From assembly GCF_032062105.1 (NCBI RefSeq), contig NW_026928083.1, positions 186,001 through 250,000 on the forward strand: a DNA stretch of 64,000 nucleotides. Direction: 5' to 3'. Positions within the stretch are counted from its first letter, which is position 1; each line of letters starts with the position of its first letter. Shown here piece by piece: positions 6,047-18,761 of the stretch. Both the position numbers and the translations under genes were made by a program. Origin of the DNA: Saccostrea cucullata (taxonomy: Eukaryota). The notes below the pieces were generated by a model that made no database searches, was not told the DNA's origin, and saw nothing but the letters and a program-made list of their open reading frames with translations.

Positions 6047-9000
6047 TTATGCACACGCCACTTCTACCGCGGCTGGCTGAGGTGGTGCCCATGCAATAGT
6101 CGGTTGTGGTTGTCGTACCGGTTCCGGTTGAACCATGGTGGCCTCTCGGGATGGTGCCATTGTTTCCTGCCTTTCCGGTGCTGCGGGTGGGGCGGTCTCT
6201 ACTCTGTGGGGGGCGGGTTCGGAGGGAGGGTGGGGCTGAAACACCGTCGTCTGAGTTGCTGCCGACTCGTTCTGCACCGCGGTTTTGGGGCGATCTCTTG
6301 CTGGGTTGTACCAGTTCATGCAGGAGGCCACGGTTTCCCGCACTGTTCCCCTTGCAGACATGGCACGGTTTTTCCTATTTAACAAACTAAGTTTAAGCGC
6401 CTCATTGTTCATACAGTTGATTATTTTTTTGTTTGGGTTAGCGGTTTCACTGCCATGGGCGTATCTGTATGAAGTGGTTACCCCTTCAAAAGAGGAGGGG
6501 GGTTTCTTTACATAAATCTGAGGTACACTTTTTGAGGTTTTGAAGTCCGTTTTGTATGTTGATACCAGAGGCCGCATCGTTCGCTGAACATATTCCCTTT
6601 CTGGCATCCATGTGATAAAGTCCTGCTTGAAGCTATAGGCTCTGTTGGGTGCCCTCTTACGTCCTAAGCCCTGAAATCACAGAAAACAACTTCACTCTCT
6701 GCAATATTTTGGCTATAATGGTATAAAGTATAGTATATACTATATACATTATACCATTATAGCCATGATCATAAACATTATTAAGATTCATTTAAAGACA
6801 TTTTTAGTTATCAAAAATATTGAAAAACTTGATACTTCAAAATAACAAAGTCAATCAGTAAATCTGCATTGTATGATTTTTCTCAGAAATTGATTTTAAT
6901 CAAATGAATGATTGAAACAAATTCTCAAAGACTTCAATCTTACAAATGCATGACCTTGAAGTTCATGAAAATAATTAAAATTAATGATAACACTTTACCT
7001 GAATTCAAACTCTTACAAAGATAAACATAGGTAATCAGAGATTACAGAGCTCACCTCAACGAATGTTGTCTTTAAATAAGGCAAAGTCACACAATTAACC
7101 AACAAAAAATGTACATTCCAAAAATGAAAATATCTAAGCAATTTTGATCTGATACTTTGAAGTAGACCAACATAAAAAATTTAAAGTAGTTCTTCTTCAT
7201 GAAAATGTAATTCAGCATCTAAAGCAAATTTGAGTTTTCATCTCTTGATGCAACATTTGTGCAAGTTTGGTTTAAACAATGTTATAAAAGCCTTAAAGTT
7301 TTTTGGTAATAGACCTGCAACCATAACTTTAACCTGGTCTATTATCTGAAAAATATATATGTCGAATTCAGCATCCGAAGCAAGTCCATTAGTGTGCATC
7401 CTGTCCATGCAAGTTTGCACATTATAAGGCTCATAGTTAATTGGAAATGAAACATACATCAAAAACTAACATTTTCACTCATCCACAAAATGTATCAGAT
7501 ATCCGAAGCAAGCCTGGTAGTATGCATATAGATGTATCATCCATGCAAGACTGGTCATTAAAGAACTCATAGTTACTTGGAAATGAAACCTGCACCAAAA
7601 ACTTTTACTTGTTCACTCAACCGGAAAATGTGTGTTTCAGCATCCGAAGCAAGCCCGGTAGTGTGCATCCTTAGATTTATCATCCATGCAAGTTTGGTCA
7701 ACATAGGGCTTAAAGTTACTTGCAAATGAAACCTGCTCCAAACACTTTAACCTGTTCACTCAACTGGAAAATGTAGGTCAGATTCAGCACAAGCAAGCCC
7801 GGTAGTATCCATCCTTAGATGTATCATCCATGCAAGTTTGGTCAACATAGGGCTTATAGTTACTTGGAAATGAAACCTGCACCAAAAACTTTAACCTGTT
7901 CACTCAACCGGAAAATGTAGGTCAGATTCAGCATCCGAAGCAAGCCTGGTTGTATCCATCCTTAGATGTATCATCCATGCAAGTTTGGTCAACATAGGAC
8001 TTACAGATACTTGGAAATGAAACCTGCACCAAAAAAATTTAACCTGTTCACTCAACGGAAAAAGTAGGTCAGATTCAGCATCCGAAGCAAGCCCGGTAGT
8101 ATGCATCCTTAGATGTATCATCCATGCAAGTTTGGTTAACATAGGGCTTATAGTTACTTGGAAATGAAACCTACACCAAAAACTGCACCAAAAATGTTAA
8201 CCTGCTTCAAAAACATTAACCTGGTCATTCCTTTGCTAAAATTGCAGCATCTGAAACTTTGACTGGTACAATGAAACACACTAGAACCATCTTCCATGCA
8301 TGTCTAATCAATATAGGACATTACTTAAAAAGAAAACTGCTCCAAAAAACTTAACCTTAACCCGGGACGCCGGATAGGGCTCCCCCAACTTCGTTGAGGT
8401 GAGCTAAAAATCAAATAAATTTTTTAGTTGATAATCTAATTTAATAATGATATGTACTCACTTGTTCAAAGTACAGTGCATCGTTCAGGAATGATTCTCT
8501 GTTATCGTGGTTAGAAAAAACGTGTCTAGCTGTAGGTTGCTGAAGTAAAAAGAGGATATCGTTTTATAAACGTATAATTCTGATGAACATGCTGCTCCAA
8601 TATAATAAATAAAGTTCAATGGTATGTTAAATGTATCATGCAATGTTTCTAGAATATTAAATAAAACTGAGATTTATGCCATCAGGTTAATTTTGTTTGC
8701 TTCAATTGTTTTCTTCTATGATACATGTATGGACAAGTTTTGCCTCAACAGATATATTAAATCATACTAAAATTAAAGTTTACATGCAGTTGATTGAGTT
8801 AAAAAAAGAAAATGATTGTGATTTTGGCCTTTTGTCATTAAGTTACTCGTTTTAACTTTAATTTCAAGGTAGGGTTGAAGTGCTTAATAAGTCTGCAACC
8901 CTATTTTTTTTCCTTTCTCTTTTCTAATAATCACCTAGCTGATACAAACTACATGTTGTGAAAAATAAACTACCGTACATGTAATATTGATTGAGTATTT

Positions 9001-13639: not shown

Positions 13640-16600
13640 ATGAAGAAAAGCATGTTTTCAAACCATGTTTCAAGAAGAGACCTTTTTCTGTATGGTGGAC
13701 ACAAAAGGTATAATTCTGCTTTTTAGTTATTACACTGTTATTGATTACCAAGTTAATTTCCAACTGCTTATTTTACTAAGTGTGTGAAGCTTATATTAAG
13801 TTAGCCTAATTAAGATAGTAAAACACATTTCCAGAAAGTCAAAAAATCAAGTTTTAATGATTAATATAACTATTTATAATTCATGAACCCATTCTCTGAT
13901 TTTGGGATTATTGGGTTATGAATTTTTAAAGTTGCTTGAAGTGCTTTATTTTTTGATAAGTTACTTGTGTCTCAGAGTCTTTATTTTACATTAACAGTCA
14001 GAAGAATGATAAGTCCAGCTTCCAGCAGATCTCCACTCAGTCACAAGAATTTTCACAGGGACTGGAGGGATTCAACTTGAGCAATGGTTCATCTGAGGTA
14101 GAGGTCAATAATGAACGAAAAATTAAAAAGTTATAATTTGAAGAAAATAAGAAGTCTTTGAGTTGGAGTCATTGGAGAAAAATATTTATTGTTGATATCA
14201 TATATGAAAAAAGCATCTATAGATGATATTTTTGAGAGTACATCAAAAATCACTTTTATTTTCTATTGAATCAATAGTAAATTATACATATATTGGGCAA
14301 ATTTTTGGAGCAGTTTGAGGTGCATAGATCAGCTCTGATAGGAAATCCTCACGCTCATTGGACTATGACATAACAACTACGTCACTCAACTGATAAGGGT
14401 TAAATTTGCACACTATTCGACTGATTAGGGTTAGTCTTGCACCCTCCTGAGAGATAAGGGTTAGTCCTCTCTGTATGAAGCCTATTAGGGTTAGTCTTGC
14501 GCCTATCCGAGAGATTAGGGTTAGTCCTCGCACATTATTCGACAGATAAGGGTTAGTTTAGCATCTGCCCTGGAGATTTCGTCTGAACGTCTTAGTCCTT
14601 GCATACCATACGATGGATTAGGGTTAGTGAATCCTTCTTTTAGTTAAATTAAGAAATTAAGTTGTTTCTGTAATTTTTTCAAGATCATAATTCAGATTCA
14701 TAGGCATTTCCTTCGTTTGTTCACATGGCTAAGTCCGAAAGAAATGACACTAAGCATGCGCCGCATGCGCTTCGTTCAGAATTATTCTTTGTCGATTTTT
14801 TCCATGAATAAACAACTTTTTATTAATTTTTTTCAGAGAACAAGGTTAAAAACTTTGTTTAAAAACAAAGTTTTAAACTAAACTTATAATTAAACTTTTA
14901 ATTCAATTTTGGGGTCAAAAGGCCAAAAAACCTCGTATTTAAAATTTTTTTCGATCGCTCACGCGATCTCATATATACTGAAGTCGCCTTTGGCGACACT
15001 ACATTTTAGCGCGTTTTTCTGGGGACCGGTAAAGTAAAGTTGTTCCGTAAATTGTACATTATAATATTGGGCAAATTTTTGGAGCGGTTTGAGGTGCATA
15101 GATCAGCTCCGTTAGGAAACCACTGAAATATATATATCATATTTTAATAGCAGTTGTCCCAAGGAAGGAAAATGTTTGACAGTTACAACACACCACAGAG
15201 TAGCAGTAACAAGAACCTGGCCTCTCTGATGAAGCCTATCTCCAGTGTGTCTTCAGCCCCAGGGCGCCCAAAGTTCCAACAGCAATACCAGAACAACAGA
15301 CTCAAAGCAAAGGAAAATGAAGACAGGTAAATAAAATTATTACAAGGGGAAAAGAGCAGTTAAGTCTAGATCTTACGGCATAGCTATTTATTGTGTTTGA
15401 GTGAACCTCAGAAAAGCCATGATGATCTTGAATGTTAAAAAATTAAACTTTTAATTAAATTTTCATACGTTTAAGCCTCTTTCTGAGTTAAAATGATTTC
15501 TGACCGATTTAATTTTCAGAGAGCTGATGCAGGCAATATCGCACACTGTTAGAGAATGCTCAGAAGAGGTTAGTACATTAAGACATCAAATCATTTTTTC
15601 AGGATGTCTTGGTTGCTAAATATTTGTATGTCCTTCCTTTATCATTATATAAAACAGAAATTATGAAATGTATTTAGGTTCAAAATGCCATGAAAGTCAT
15701 ACCAGAACACTTGGGAGAACACATGCAAATGTTTGGAGATTCCTTAACAAAACTGATCAATGACAGTGAGTATAAAAATATATATGAAAGTGCAGGACAA
15801 TTAACATTTTAAATGTGCAGTAAGAGGCAGATCATTCAGGTGAATGACACCTCATGCTTTCTGTAATGAGGAATAAATTTTTCAAATTTCCCAAAATTTC
15901 CAATTTAAATCCCATGTTTATGCATTAATCTTTTGAAAACAGATCTGCAAGAGCAGTTTGAAAATATCATCCTGACTTTTCAAGATCAAAAAGATGCTAG
16001 GCAGCAGATTGGTGAAATGAAAGGAATCATAGAAGAGGTAAATTTGTCTTAATCAAGGAGAGTAGCCATGGGGTCAAACCGTCAAAGGTGTTCAATGCAA
16101 ATATTTGTGAAGCAAAATAAGTAACTGTTTCATGTCAAAAGCTTGCAGAATATATATCTTAGTGCATGTATGTATATAAAAAAAGAGACATGTTTCATTA
16201 TCCAAATTTTCTGCAATTAGAAACAAGCACAGATAGATGACCTCCAGAAACAGTTGGATCACCATCAGAAAGCCGGGTGTCAGCAGTCAGTGGAGAAAGT
16301 GACCGATGTCATTCACAAGAGCCGGGATCACGTGGACAGACAGCTCCTGACTCTGATAGACAGCAACCAGGCCATCACAGAGAACCAGCACAGGATACTA
16401 CAGGGGCAGGAGAACCAGCTGAATGTCGGGAACCAGAATCACAGCCAACTACAACAGAGACTGGATAACATGCCAACGAACATCGGGAAAAACAGCAGGT
16501 ACATTTGTTTACAATAAAATAAAGTAAATTGAACTTTAGATTACTGTGTCAGTGATAATGGTTGCGGCAATAGGTACAAGAACTTTTTCAATTAAGATAT

Positions 16601-18761
16601 TGAACAAACCAATAATAAAAAGACTAAAGAACCAATAAATTTTACATCAGATGATACCTGATTACACTATATGAGAAATCTGTAGAAGTTAGGTTAGAGT
16701 TTGAGTGAGATGAAAGAATTTAATTTTTTTATAATTGCAGTTTTGCAGAAGAAATAAAATGTATAAGAAGAGAATTAGAAATCCAGAAGATGGAGGCTCT
16801 AGAATTCTTTCAAGATTTGTTCACGAAGAGCAGTGATGAGCAGACCAGAGACATTAGCAAACAAATAGAGAGTGAAGTAAGCCGATCCACCAAAACCATC
16901 TGTAATACCTCTAACAGTGTGGCCAACATCCAGAGAGATTTCCTTCATGATACAATGAAAGAGCAGCAAGAAGAGCTGAAGGCCTTCCTGAAATCTGAAC
17001 TACAGAGGGCACACAGAAACCAGTCCAGCAGGGAATCTGTGGACTCCTTCCATGCAAAGCACAGAGATTACACAGAGACCTATAATGATAGGAAATGTAG
17101 ATCTCCTGCCCCAGTACAAACCGGGAGAGAGCCAGTTGGTTTTGTTCAGAAAGAGAGCAAAGAAATCAGACAGCAGGACCCTCAACAAATTCAGTTTTAT
17201 GACAATCCACACAAAGAAACCAGTTCTGTGTTCAAGTCTGAAAGGAAACAAAAGTCTACCCAACACGATTTTATGTCTCCTGACACAAACGGAAATCATA
17301 GTCAAAGCAAAGCGTTTTTCCAAAGACCAAACCCATCTCCTGTTGCCACAGTTCTACCACAGCCCCAGGAGAAAGGCCAGTCCCAGGGGAGGGGCCAGTC
17401 CAGAATTGGGAAGGAATCCCAGGAAAACTACCAGGCAGGGGACAGAGGTCAAATGACTCAAGGAAGAGCAGACAGGAAAAATGACAAGTTTAGAAACATG
17501 GCACCCAAAAGGAGATCGCAGAGGATTGCAGAATTTTCACAAAATTCGGAAAGCAGTTCAGAAAACATCCCTGTCAACAGTATTCCTGTATATGCCTCTC
17601 AGAACTGTTTTGATAGTCAACAATTGTCATGTTCTTCAAATGAATCACAAGATGACATTATTTCATCTTATGCCAAGAAACCACGATATAATACACAGAA
17701 CCATGAATGTCACACTAGCTTGTCAAAGAATTTTGCTCTTTCTGCTGATGGTCACCTTCCAAGGCAACATACTTATAACTATGGAACAGTGAGACCAAAT
17801 GTCAGAACTCCATTAAAGAAGTTTGGTAAAGATGCTGATGTTTTCCAATTTTCTGAAGAAAATTCAAACTTTCCTAAAACTGGACTTGGAAATCCCATCT
17901 CTAGAATGAATAAAAGAGAAAAACTGGTGGAAAATGATACAGAAGTGGTAAGTTAACCGCTAGGATCACAACTTCTGTAGTGAAATTTTCTATCGAGGCT
18001 TGCATAAAAAATGATACCATAGTTTGTCATTGCCATTTTCAGAGAGGTACATGAAACTTTTCTAGCTCTAGATTAATGAAAAACTGCAGTTGGATATAAT
18101 CAGTAACATGTTAACCTCCTCATCTTGTAACTGGTTAAAATTTATGATTTAATAATATGGAGGAATGATTGATTTTTCAGTCTGAAGAGAGCAGAGACTC
18201 CTCCCCTTCAGTGTCCATCACTAAAATCATGATCAAAAGGAAATCTCGCCGAGATTCACCCGCCTCGTCCGTCTTCAGCAACTTCAGGACATGTACATGT
18301 TTATCTACTTCAATATGTTGTCAAATACTACAATATGTTGTCAAATACTATAATATAATGTAGTTAAAGCATTAAGCCATTAACTTTGCTAATTTTTAAG
18401 TAGAAAAAAAAGAGAAAATATACGAAATAAAATGGGGTTACCTCAAAAATATGTTTTGCAGACTCCCATTCCAAGGCCAAACCTATCACTTCTACTCCAG
18501 GATACCAGCCATCTGAAAGTGGATGGAAAGTGAACAGAGGGGTAAATGCCTTTTGAGAATTACTTCTTTAACTAAGATATTTTCATATTATAAAAATTCA
18601 TTTATAAACCATGCATTCATTTAGTTTTATCTCTGACAAATTTGTAAACGTAGGACATTCTGACTAAGAGACAGGAGAGTTATAAGAGGAACCTGATGCA
18701 GGTCGATGATGATCTACTAGAGTTGTCCCATAGGATCCAGAACCAGCTCAAAAGGAGGTGA
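13640..18761 (+). CDS. IHO1: IHO1/CCDC36-like (Mer2/Rec15/PRD3 family) meiotic double-strand-break axis protein, ~786 aa; exons 13640-13707, 13998-14097, 15151-15326, 15520-15568, 15678-15765, 15943-16037, 16221-16498, 16741-17947, 18181-18292, 18462-18541, 18654-18761
   Basis: Eleven GT-AG exons join in frame (2361 nt). SQ/TQ-rich N-terminus, then a coiled coil GRPKFQQQYQNNRLKAKENEDRELMQAISHTVRE..VQ..EHL...Q..DSL..LQEQ..QD..IGEMK..EEKQ that lines up with the human IHO1 coiled coil as I recall it (..EQFEEKKKRAKDKCDSETL..VRES..LQ..DHL..Q..DSL..LQE..QDK..ILEMK..EARQ), then a long disordered tail. The start exon and the exon 9 donor are less certain. Confidence 0.75.
14290..15119. mobile_element. 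Unclassified 830-bp insertion bounded by 56-bp direct repeats, in IHO1 intron 2
   Basis: atattgggcaaatttttggagc(a/g)gtttgaggtgcatagatcagctc(t/c)g(a/t)taggaaa at 14290-14345 and 15064-15119 (3 mismatches). Internal hairpin gtcgcc-ttt-ggcgac (14983-14997). Confidence 0.6.
14392..14628. repeat. ~30-bp minisatellite with conserved telomere-like core GAT(T/A)AGGGTTAGT and variable remainder (7 cores plus 1 degenerate)
   Basis: Units start at 14392, 14423, 14453, 14483, 14513, 14545, (14575), 14616. Confidence 0.9.

What the first reader, a model, noticed from the sequence alone, without database searches (positions are those of the whole stretch)
6047..18761. CIMIP7(C3orf84)-IHO1 head-to-head pair: a possible ancient bilaterian germline module
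Seen: two divergent spliced genes with ATGs ~620 bp apart (13017 -, 13640 +). Recalled knowledge: human C3orf84/CIMIP7 and IHO1/CCDC36 are adjacent and divergent on 3p21; IHO1 is the Mer2-family partner of HORMAD1 and REC114-MEI4 needed for SPO11 breaks; CIMIP7 is an axonemal inner protein. Inference: the linkage predates the protostome-deuterostome split and may be kept by a shared promoter coupling meiotic DSB formation to sperm-flagellum building. The synteny also supports calling this fast-evolving protein IHO1.
Basis: partly seen in the sequence, partly recalled or inferred. Interest (0 to 1): 0.8.

Follow-up and report, generated by a model that had tools for sequence, protein, structure and literature searches.

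The report
Ancient CIMIP7–IHO1 head-to-head gene pair
In this oyster genome a cilium-protein gene (CIMIP7/C3orf84) and a fast-evolving gene that is very probably the meiotic break factor IHO1 sit back to back on one short shared promoter, an arrangement also found in scallop, limpet, brachiopod, sea star and a fish, so it is very old, but that the two genes work as one germline unit is not shown.

Summary
Two spliced, single-copy genes of Saccostrea cucullata diverge from ATGs at 13017 (-) and 13640 (+). RNA reads show their splice junctions.

The minus gene (287 aa, P0001) is a clear one-to-one orthologue of vertebrate C3orf84/CIMIP7 (Pfam HDNR, 65 bits).

The plus gene (786 aa, P0052) is annotated "uncharacterized". 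Whole-protein, exon-wise, PDB and ESM-atlas searches found nothing. Sub-range Pfam scans give IHO1 (PF15771) as the top family:
- best E = 4e-6 at 26.3 bits, against a cut-off of 27;
- residues 98-216 match profile positions 97-218;
- the Magallana gigas proteins (P0053, P0054) give the same register, but the closer S. echinata protein (P0049) gives no IHO1 row.

In reedfish, the gene divergent from C3orf84-like is a Pfam-positive IHO1. In oysters, scallop, limpet, Lingula and a sea star, the divergent neighbour belongs to the same family as P0052.

The pair is not seen in the annotation of amphioxus or Owenia, nor within 10 kb in a shark or an acoel.

A 159-bp intergenic block is about 90% conserved between oyster genera.

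Functional coupling is untested. In three RNA runs the two genes are not tightly co-expressed.

Verdict: new members of known kinds, plus an apparently undescribed ancient microsynteny. The scan had not noted this pair on other DNA.

The parts
6047..6670 (-). CIMIP7/C3orf84 orthologue, last coding exon (CDS 6670-6050, stop 6049-6047), 207 aa
   Evidence: Open frame. 100% identical to P0001. The own-genome search places P0001 residues 79-287 here.
8462..8539 (-). CIMIP7 exon 3, 26 aa, carrying the HDNR motif
   Evidence: Alone it matches PF15115 at E=0.016. The junction to exon 2 is seen as a loose end at 12107 in runs X17 and X18.
12107..12220 (-). CIMIP7 exon 2, 38 aa
   Evidence: Splice sites in the sequence. 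RNA junction 12220|12970 in X16, X17 and X18.
12970..13017 (-). CIMIP7 exon 1 coding part (ATG 13017), 16 aa. The 5'UTR runs on upstream of 13017.
   Evidence: Reads fall in bin 12985-13181. Conserved with C. virginica.
13117..13275 (.). Conserved intergenic block of 159 bp, the likely shared core promoter. It holds a CCAAT box at 13203 and an ETS-type ACTTCCGG at 13251.
   Evidence: About 90% identical between Saccostrea and Crassostrea virginica, while the flanks are not alignable. Motifs. It lies between the two 5'UTRs.
13276..13348 (+). IHO1-like gene, non-coding first exon. The 3' end at 13348 is defined; the 5' end is approximate.
   Evidence: A contig of run X1 joins about 13348 to about 13628. 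A GT donor lies at 13349 and an AG acceptor at 13626-13627.
13628..13707 (+). IHO1-like exon with ATG 13640. The first 22 aa are the highly conserved extreme N-terminus.
   Evidence: 95% identical to C. virginica, against about 46% in the middle of the protein. Junction 13707|13998 in X17 and X1.
13998..14097 (+). IHO1-like coding exon 2, an S/Q-rich stretch
   Evidence: Similar S/Q-rich exons occur in the Pecten, Lingula and Patiria neighbours (by eye).
15151..15326 (+). IHO1-like coding exon 3. It ends in the conserved basic motif (F-Q-Q-Q..K-A-K-E-N-E-D-R) followed by an intron.
   Evidence: Motif and intron position are shared with Pecten (7.4e-6), Lingula (1.6e-4) and Patiria (4.8e-5).
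15274..16292 (+). Span (with introns) encoding residues 98-216, the part that matches Pfam IHO1 profile positions 97-218. It covers the end of exon 3, exons 4-6 (15520-15568, 15678-15765, 15943-16037) and the start of exon 7.
   Evidence: P0052:80-260 scores E=4e-6 at 26.3 bits, as top family. P0052:90-200 scores 2.5e-5. A helix starts at residue 96 in the AlphaFold model.
16221..16498 (+). IHO1-like coding exon 7 (coiled coil)
   Evidence: Homologous exons in Pecten (1.4e-3) and Patella (3e-4).
16741..17947 (+). IHO1-like coding exon 8, 402 aa: the end of the helical region, then a long disordered, fast-evolving stretch
   Evidence: Only three relatives, the best a Saccostrea echinata protein, among 1.84 billion representatives. 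Pecten large exon at 5.8e-8.
18181..18761 (+). IHO1-like coding exons 9-11 (18181-18292, 18462-18541, 18654-18758, plus stop 18759-18761). This is the conserved C-terminus, with an acidic D-D-D patch.
   Evidence: 82-88% identical to C. virginica. Patella exon at 2.5e-5. Alignment.

Best explanation
The region holds a bidirectional gene pair of the oyster Saccostrea cucullata.

On the minus strand lies the one-to-one orthologue of vertebrate C3orf84/CIMIP7. This is a small HDNR-domain protein, named as a ciliary microtubule inner protein.

On the plus strand lies a 786-aa protein that is most probably the oyster orthologue of IHO1, the animal member of the Mer2 family. Its layout is:
- a short conserved N-terminus;
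- a disordered S/Q-rich stretch;
- a long helical region starting at about residue 96;
- a long disordered, fast-evolving middle;
- a conserved C-terminus with an acidic patch.

By analogy with mouse IHO1 it would tetramerise through the helix. It would bind REC114-MEI4 with its N-terminus and the HORMAD axis protein with its C-terminus, so that SPO11 can break DNA. These steps are inferred, not shown here.

Both genes start from one compact region of about 160 bp that is under strong constraint within oysters.

The head-to-head arrangement goes back at least to the last common ancestor of protostomes and deuterostomes. It was kept in several phyla and broken in others. I take intertwined core-promoter elements as the likeliest reason for its persistence. 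A requirement for joint expression is not shown.
For: Gene models and transcription:
- Exon models equal database proteins P0001 and P0052.
- Junctions are seen in RNA.
- Both genes are single-copy.

CIMIP7 identity:
- PF15115 at 65.4 bits against a cut-off of 27.
- A mollusc profile reaches proteins that NCBI names C3orf84-like: reedfish at 1.6e-42, shark at 3.4e-37 and amphioxus.
- The tree is species-like and single-copy.

IHO1 identity:
- PF15771 is the top family for P0052:80-260 (4e-6, 26.3 bits), P0052:60-200 (2e-5), P0053:95-220 (7.6e-5) and P0054:95-220 (1.7e-4).
- All are in one register, residues about 98-216 on profile 97-218. The next family scores 7e-3 or worse in the 80-260 and 95-220 ranges.
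- After correction for the 69 pieces I scanned, the best E is about 3e-4.
- AlphaFold gives disorder for residues 1-95 and helices for 96-400. This matches the mouse layout described in PMC10425845.
- The own genome has REC114 and MEI4 exons over their cut-offs, but no other PF15771 candidate.

Synteny:
- In reedfish the divergent neighbour carries PF15771.
- C. virginica has a 776-aa neighbour with all 11 exons matching.
- The Pecten, Patella, Lingula and Patiria neighbours are collinear and significant against six-frame controls.

Promoter: a 159-bp block is about 90% conserved between oyster genera.
Against: - The IHO1 match is below Pfam's curated cut-off.
- It disappears in whole-protein scans, in P0052:95-400 and in all sub-ranges of the S. 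echinata orthologue P0049.
- It lies in a coiled-coil region, where composition can inflate scores.
- No exon of the Patiria, Patella, Lingula or Pecten neighbours hits PF15771.
- The ESM atlas and PDB give nothing.
- No vertebrate IHO1 sequence could be fetched, so no profile-profile comparison was run.
- The pair is absent in the annotations of amphioxus and Owenia. It is not seen within 10 kb in shark or acoel.
- Promoter conservation is shown only between two oyster genera. Beyond them shared words do not exceed shuffled controls, except weakly in Lingula.
- Meiotic expression and all protein interactions are untested.
Confidence: 0.72

Rival explanations
1. The plus gene is a lineage-restricted coiled-coil protein unrelated to IHO1. 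The weak Pfam match would be coiled-coil noise, and the position next to CIMIP7 a coincidence or a replacement.
For: - No family is found in whole-protein or exon-wise scans.
- The best score is under the cut-off.
- P0049 gives no IHO1 row.
- NCBI names are unrelated.
- Only three relatives, the best a Saccostrea echinata protein, were found among 1.84 billion representatives with exon 8.
Against: - IHO1 is the top family in three proteins of two genera, in the same register. In the 80-260 and 95-220 sub-ranges it beats the next family by a hundredfold or more.
- The matched stretch starts where the helix starts.
- The same neighbour family sits head-to-head with CIMIP7 in four invertebrate phyla-level lineages. 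In a vertebrate that place is held by a Pfam-positive IHO1.
- REC114 and MEI4 are present, but there is no other IHO1 candidate.
Confidence: 0.15
2. The pair is kept because one promoter must switch both genes on together in the male germline, coupling break formation to the building of the sperm flagellum.
For: - The two starts are very close and the core block is strongly constrained within oysters.
- The arrangement is long-lived across phyla.
- Run X17 has reads of both genes.
- From general knowledge, not tested here: both mammalian genes are testis-enriched.
Against: - In three oligo-dT runs of one study, the CIMIP7 gene is read in all three. The IHO1-like gene is read across its exons only in X17 (few reads, tissues unknown).
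- Meiotic prophase and flagellum assembly are separated in time.
- CIMIP7 is also expected in somatic ciliated tissue.
- The pair has been broken in amphioxus and Owenia.
- No RFX X-box or other shared germline element was found.
Confidence: 0.2
3. The adjacency is a neutral leftover. Short intergenic head-to-head pairs simply offer few break points, so some survive by chance, without regulatory entanglement or selection.
For: Losses in several lineages. Intergenic distance varies from 0.5 to 9.3 kb. There is no sequence conservation of the promoter beyond oysters.
Against: Survival in Mollusca, Brachiopoda, Echinodermata and Vertebrata, with orientation kept, is far more than expected for a random neighbour pair over more than 500 million years. 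This is inference; no genome-wide null was computed here. The oyster core block is much more conserved than its flanks.
Confidence: 0.25

Closest known systems
Vertebrate IHO1 (CCDC36), the animal member of the Mer2/Rec15/PRD3 family (Pfam PF15771)
   Same: - Top Pfam family for residues 98-216.
- Same order of parts: conserved extreme N-terminus, disordered stretch, long central helix, long disordered region, conserved C-terminus with an acidic patch.
- Same genomic place and orientation next to C3orf84 as in reedfish.
- The partners REC114 and MEI4 are present in the genome.
   Different: - 786 aa, against 574 in mouse.
- The helical region is longer (about 96-400, against 114-245).
- The score is just under the curated cut-off.
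- The N- and C-terminal motifs are not recognisably alike by any search run here.
- There are no functional data.
C3orf84/CIMIP7 (Pfam PF15115, HDNR)
   Same: Full HDNR domain at 65 bits, with the HDNR motif itself. It is single-copy and species-tree-like, and vertebrate members are reached at 1e-42. The neighbour genes are as in vertebrates: IHO1 in reedfish, and a kelch gene in shark.
   Different: It is longer than the vertebrate proteins (287 against about 220-230 aa), with a proline-rich tail. No solved structure holds a relative, so the position inside the axoneme is taken from the gene's name, not tested.
Conserved bidirectional (head-to-head) gene pairs and ancient metazoan microsynteny blocks (general knowledge)
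   Same: Two divergent genes with starts a few hundred bases apart, a constrained shared core region with CCAAT and ETS-type sites, and retention across phyla.
   Different: One partner evolves so fast that standard orthology pipelines would not link it across phyla. The pair may therefore have been missed in published surveys. I found no paper naming both genes together.

Membership tests
C3orf84/CIMIP7 (PF15115 HDNR) | Match to the HDNR profile over Pfam's curated cut-off | tested here: met
   P0001 scores 65.4 bits against a cut-off of 27, E=1.1e-17, residues 13-141.
C3orf84/CIMIP7 (PF15115 HDNR) | Conserved H-D-N-R motif | tested here: met
   Exon 3 (8539-8462) reads ..S-N-H-D-N-R-E-S-F... 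H, D, N and R are nearly invariant in 13 molluscs.
C3orf84/CIMIP7 (PF15115 HDNR) | One-to-one orthology with vertebrate C3orf84 rather than with another HDNR-bearing gene | tested here: met
   A mollusc profile hits reedfish and shark proteins named C3orf84-like. The tree shows no old duplication. The other HDNR exon of this genome (L001) has no BLAST similarity to this group.
C3orf84/CIMIP7 (PF15115 HDNR) | Location inside ciliary doublet microtubules | not testable with these tools
   No chain in the PDB matches the protein or the profile. PMC10973386 only predicts microtubule-binding Mn repeats in C3ORF84.
IHO1 / Mer2 family (PF15771) | Match to the IHO1 profile over Pfam's curated cut-off | tested here: inconclusive
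   Best score 26.3 bits against a cut-off of 27 (E=4e-6), as top family in a consistent register in P0052, P0053 and P0054. There is no hit with whole proteins, single exons or P0049.
IHO1 / Mer2 family (PF15771) | Central long helix or coiled coil flanked by disordered regions | tested here: met
   AlphaFold monomer model: residues 1-95 have no structure, helices span 96-400, pLDDT reaches up to 78. Mouse layout is described in PMC10425845. Tetramer formation was not tested.
IHO1 / Mer2 family (PF15771) | Conserved extreme N-terminus that binds the REC114 PH domain | not testable with these tools
   The first 22 aa are 95% identical between oyster genera, while the middle is about 46%. This fits a binding motif. 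Similarity to the mouse motif and actual binding could not be tested.
IHO1 / Mer2 family (PF15771) | C-terminal short motif (SSM2) with an acidic patch that binds HORMAD1 | tested here: inconclusive
   The C-terminal exons are 82-88% conserved and hold a D-D-D patch about 20 aa from the end. The mouse patch F-D-S-S-D-D is at the very end (PMC10997794). The resemblance is by eye only.
IHO1 / Mer2 family (PF15771) | Positional orthology with vertebrate IHO1 | tested here: met
   In reedfish, a 651-aa PF15771 protein diverges from C3orf84-like, 9.3 kb away. The invertebrate neighbours are homologous to P0052.
IHO1 / Mer2 family (PF15771) | Expression in early meiotic cells and need for SPO11 breaks | not testable with these tools
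   Transcribed in runs X17 and X1. The tissues of the coded runs are unknown.

The most novel reading that the evidence does not exclude
CIMIP7-IHO1 is one of the oldest surviving bidirectional gene pairs of animals, and its shared core promoter is a functional germline switch. The pair would then serve as a positional anchor to find the 'missing' Mer2/IHO1 orthologues in invertebrate phyla where sequence searches fail. It would also link the meiotic break programme to the ciliary/flagellar gene programme at the level of one promoter.
Probability: 0.25. Interest if true: 0.7.

Novelty: new member of a known kind. Interest (0 to 1): 0.5.

Why it matters
Mer2/IHO1 proteins evolve so fast that animal members outside vertebrates are poorly charted. 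The papers I read name mammals and birds, and state that Caenorhabditis lacks a recognisable one.

Here a positional anchor plus a sub-threshold profile match identify candidates in oysters, scallop, limpet, brachiopod and sea star. Public annotation calls these uncharacterized, or gives them misleading names.

This makes the evolution of the axis-tethering step of meiotic break formation testable in marine invertebrates with accessible gonads.

The pair is also a clean case for asking why some head-to-head promoters survive for over half a billion years.

Tried and rejected
1. Exon-by-exon and whole-protein Pfam scans of the plus gene and of the neighbours in four other phyla gave no IHO1 row. 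Only sub-ranges of about 110-180 aa around residues 60-300 show it. This looks like an effect of HMMER's filters on a long, biased protein.

2. A six-frame search of the whole genome with PF15771 found nothing.

3. PDB sequence and profile searches for both proteins gave nothing meaningful.

4. The ESM atlas, queried with the whole protein and with residues 1-300, gave scores under 0.8 and no IHO1 cluster.

5. The exhaustive representative search with exon 8 returned only three relatives. The best of them is a Saccostrea echinata protein.

6. An RFX X-box in the shared promoter, which I suspected by eye at 13176-13190, has two mismatches. No canonical site (one mismatch or fewer) exists in any of eight intergenic regions, so I rejected it.

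7. Promoter word sharing beyond oysters is not above shuffled controls, except weakly in Lingula.

8. The bacterial promoter/terminator scan is irrelevant for a eukaryote.

9. I could not fetch any vertebrate IHO1 sequence. Reedfish and shark loci came without DNA. So no profile-profile comparison was run.

10. A resemblance that I recall between the oyster stretch around residues 98-135 and the human IHO1 stretch before its coiled coil is memory only. I do not use it as evidence.

11. Supplements of two papers held no usable alignments.

Joined step: I sent no self-joined spliced model to any search. In one search a script concatenated the exons only to check frame and length, and the file was deleted. 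All searches used single exons by reference, or the database proteins P0001 and P0052.

No human contig was fetched or compared.

Full report
**What the window is.** The window is G000:C10220:186001-250000 of a 1.17-Gb assembly. Its proteins are identical to NCBI models of the oyster Saccostrea cucullata. G+C is about 33%, and the genes are spliced.

**The observation.**
- The ATGs lie at 13017 (-) and 13640 (+), 623 bp apart.
- I modelled the minus gene as four coding exons: 13017-12970, 12220-12107, 8539-8462 and 6670-6050. This gives 287 aa.
- I modelled the plus gene as eleven coding exons with GT-AG introns and one open frame of 786 aa.
- Both lengths equal the database proteins P0001 and P0052. 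The last minus exon is 100% identical to P0001. All eleven plus-exon pieces occur exactly and in order in P0052.
- Public RNA runs of the same species label (95-99% alike) show the minus junction 12970|12220 in three runs, and the exon 2-3 junction as a loose end.
- They also show six plus-gene junctions at my exon borders.
- A contig of run X1 adds a non-coding plus exon ending at 13348 and spliced to 13628. The two transcription starts therefore lie roughly between 13060 and 13300.
- Both genes are single-copy in the genome.

**The minus gene.**
- P0001 matches Pfam HDNR (PF15115) at 65.4 bits against a cut-off of 27. The HDNR motif sits in exon 3.
- Mollusc relatives are named "ciliary microtubule inner protein 7-like" or "CC084-like" by NCBI.
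- A profile of 13 molluscs (A1) reaches C3orf84-like proteins of reedfish (1.6e-42), shark (3.4e-37), amphioxus, sea stars, an urchin, Lingula, nemerteans, annelids, a flatworm and an acoel.
- A maximum-likelihood tree of 31 of them follows the species groups. The only duplication is inside caenogastropods.
- A second HDNR-matching exon elsewhere in the genome (L001, 31 bits) has no BLAST similarity to this group, so it is a distant relative and not a competitor.
- No solved structure contains a relative. The axonemal position therefore rests on the gene's name, and on the prediction of microtubule-binding repeats in PMC10973386.

**The plus gene: searches that failed.**
- Single exons and whole proteins gave no Pfam IHO1 row.
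- The six-frame genome search with PF15771 was blank.
- PDB and the ESM atlas gave nothing.
- The exhaustive search of 1.84 billion representatives with exon 8 returned three relatives only. The best is a Saccostrea echinata protein.
- The word search with the S. echinata orthologue found only oyster proteins, whose names are unrelated to IHO1.

**The plus gene: what succeeded.**
- Sub-range scans give IHO1 (PF15771) as the top family:

| Query | E-value | Bits |
|---|---|---|
| P0052:80-260 | 4e-6 | 26.3 |
| P0052:60-200 | 2e-5 | 24.0 |
| P0052:90-200 | 2.5e-5 | 23.7 |
| P0053:95-220 (Magallana gigas) | 7.6e-5 | 22.1 |
| P0054:95-220 | 1.7e-4 | 21.0 |

- All are in one register: residues about 98-216 on profile positions 97-218. 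In the 80-260 and 95-220 sub-ranges the next family scores 7e-3 or worse.
- I scanned 69 pieces in all, so the corrected best E is about 3e-4.
- The score is just under the curated cut-off. P0049 and P0052:95-400 give no IHO1 row. I therefore call this strong but not conclusive.
- An AlphaFold monomer model has no structure for residues 1-95 and helices from 96 to 400. The Pfam match thus begins where the helix begins.
- Mouse IHO1 has a conserved N-terminal 23 aa that bind REC114. It has a helix at 114-245 that forms a parallel tetramer, disordered flanks, and a C-terminal acidic patch needed for HORMAD1 (PMC10425845 and PMC10997794).
- The oyster protein has the same order of parts. Its first 22 aa and last three exons are 82-95% identical between oyster genera, while the middle is about 46%.
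- The genome also carries REC114 and MEI4 exons over their cut-offs, so a Mer2-family partner is expected.

**Synteny.** The table lists what lies upstream of the C3orf84 orthologue in each species.

| Species | Upstream neighbour |
|---|---|
| Reedfish | divergent 651-aa protein with PF15771, 9.3 kb away |
| C. virginica | divergent 776-aa Pfam-less protein, 0.5 kb away, all 11 exons matching P0052's |
| Pecten | 863 aa |
| Patella | 793 aa |
| Patiria | 976 aa |
| Lingula | model that seems to fuse the neighbour with a Macro-domain gene |

- An oyster-only HMM was searched against all 10,410 six-frame segments of seven loci. The best eight rows and most of the rest lie on the correct strand upstream of the HDNR gene, in collinear order.
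- Region-wise iteration gave these pre-inclusion E-values:
  - basic motif at the end of exon 3: Pecten 7.4e-6, Lingula 1.6e-4, Patiria 4.8e-5, with the intron at the same place and phase;
  - exon 7: Pecten 1.4e-3 and Patella 3e-4;
  - exon 9: Patella 2.5e-5.
- The same gene family therefore sits head-to-head with CIMIP7 in Mollusca, Brachiopoda and Echinodermata. In a vertebrate the gene at that place is IHO1.
- The simplest reading is one ancestral pair, older than the protostome-deuterostome split.
- Exceptions:
  - amphioxus has NDUFA5 upstream on the same strand;
  - Owenia has a prefoldin gene upstream;
  - in the shark the gene is nested in a kelch gene, with no IHO1 within 10 kb;
  - the acoel has no called gene within 10 kb.
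- The human adjacency was not tested. I fetched no human sequence, and that point remains recalled knowledge.

**The promoter.**
- Aligning the intergenic region with that of C. virginica shows a 159-bp block (13117-13275) of about 90% identity, between unalignable flanks.
- It holds a CCAAT box and an ETS-type ACTTCCGG. It lies between the two 5'UTRs.
- This fits a shared core promoter. No canonical RFX site is present.
- Beyond oysters I found no convincing shared words.

**Coupling.**
- In three oligo-dT runs of one study, the CIMIP7 gene is read in all three. The IHO1-like gene is read across its exons only in X17.
- X16 and X18 have reads only at the start of exon 8.
- Depth is very low and the tissues are unknown, so this is weak evidence. 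It does not favour obligatory co-expression.
- The "germline module" idea therefore stays a hypothesis.

**Novelty.**
- I found no paper that names both genes as a pair, and none that describes invertebrate IHO1 orthologues.
- Both genes are new members of known families. The conserved pair is a new example of a known kind of arrangement.

**Limits.**
- No vertebrate IHO1 sequence was available for a profile-profile test.
- Neighbour genes in other phyla were seen only within 10-kb flanks.
- I sent no self-joined spliced model to any search. One script joined the exons only to check the frame, and the file was deleted.

Noticed in passing
window 7404-8184: A 147-bp unit repeated 5.4 times in tandem (86% matches) lies inside intron 3 of the CIMIP7 gene.
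   Followed up: no
window 14392-14557 (within 14290-15119): An array of about 30-bp units containing TTAGGG-like cores lies in intron 2 of the IHO1-like gene. It has very high summed contig depth in run X1 (136, against 2-26 on exons). Reads join opposite strands at 14396/15018. It looks like a multi-copy mobile or repeated element.
   Followed up: partly
L001 = G000:C12533:259780-262998 (exon at L001 1297-1719, minus): This is a second exon in the genome that matches Pfam HDNR (31.6 bits, profile positions 90-162). It has no BLAST similarity to the CIMIP7 group, so it is a distant HDNR-bearing gene of unknown identity.
   Followed up: partly
L007 720-9281 (Lingula anatina): The annotated 531-aa 'Macro' gene seems to fuse 5' exons homologous to the IHO1-like gene (7817-8068, 7665-7781, 6629-6811) with a downstream Macro-domain gene (about 3408-3590). 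This is a likely gene-model error.
   Followed up: partly
L007, L008, L009 downstream of the HDNR gene: A small MRP-S32 gene on the opposite strand follows the CIMIP7 orthologue in Lingula, Owenia and Patella. An APEH-type peptidase gene follows that in Lingula and Owenia. This is a second conserved neighbourhood, which holds even where the IHO1 side is broken.
   Followed up: no
L010 (G000:C13148), L011 (G000:C13259), L012 (G000:C1235): REC114-like (38.6 bits) and MEI4 (46.2 and 43 bits) exons are present in the genome. The MEI4 N-terminal exon occurs on two contigs, which could be a duplication or two haplotype contigs.
   Followed up: no
window 12000-17900: Most RNA reads of the same species label are only 95-99% alike to the assembly, with many fixed differences in exons. 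The sequenced animals differ markedly from the assembled one, either through high heterozygosity or a cryptic lineage.
   Followed up: no
P0052 (method note): The Pfam IHO1 match appears only when sub-ranges of about 110-200 aa are scanned. It vanishes for the whole protein and for residues 95-400. Long, biased proteins may hide sub-threshold family matches from routine scans.
   Followed up: yes
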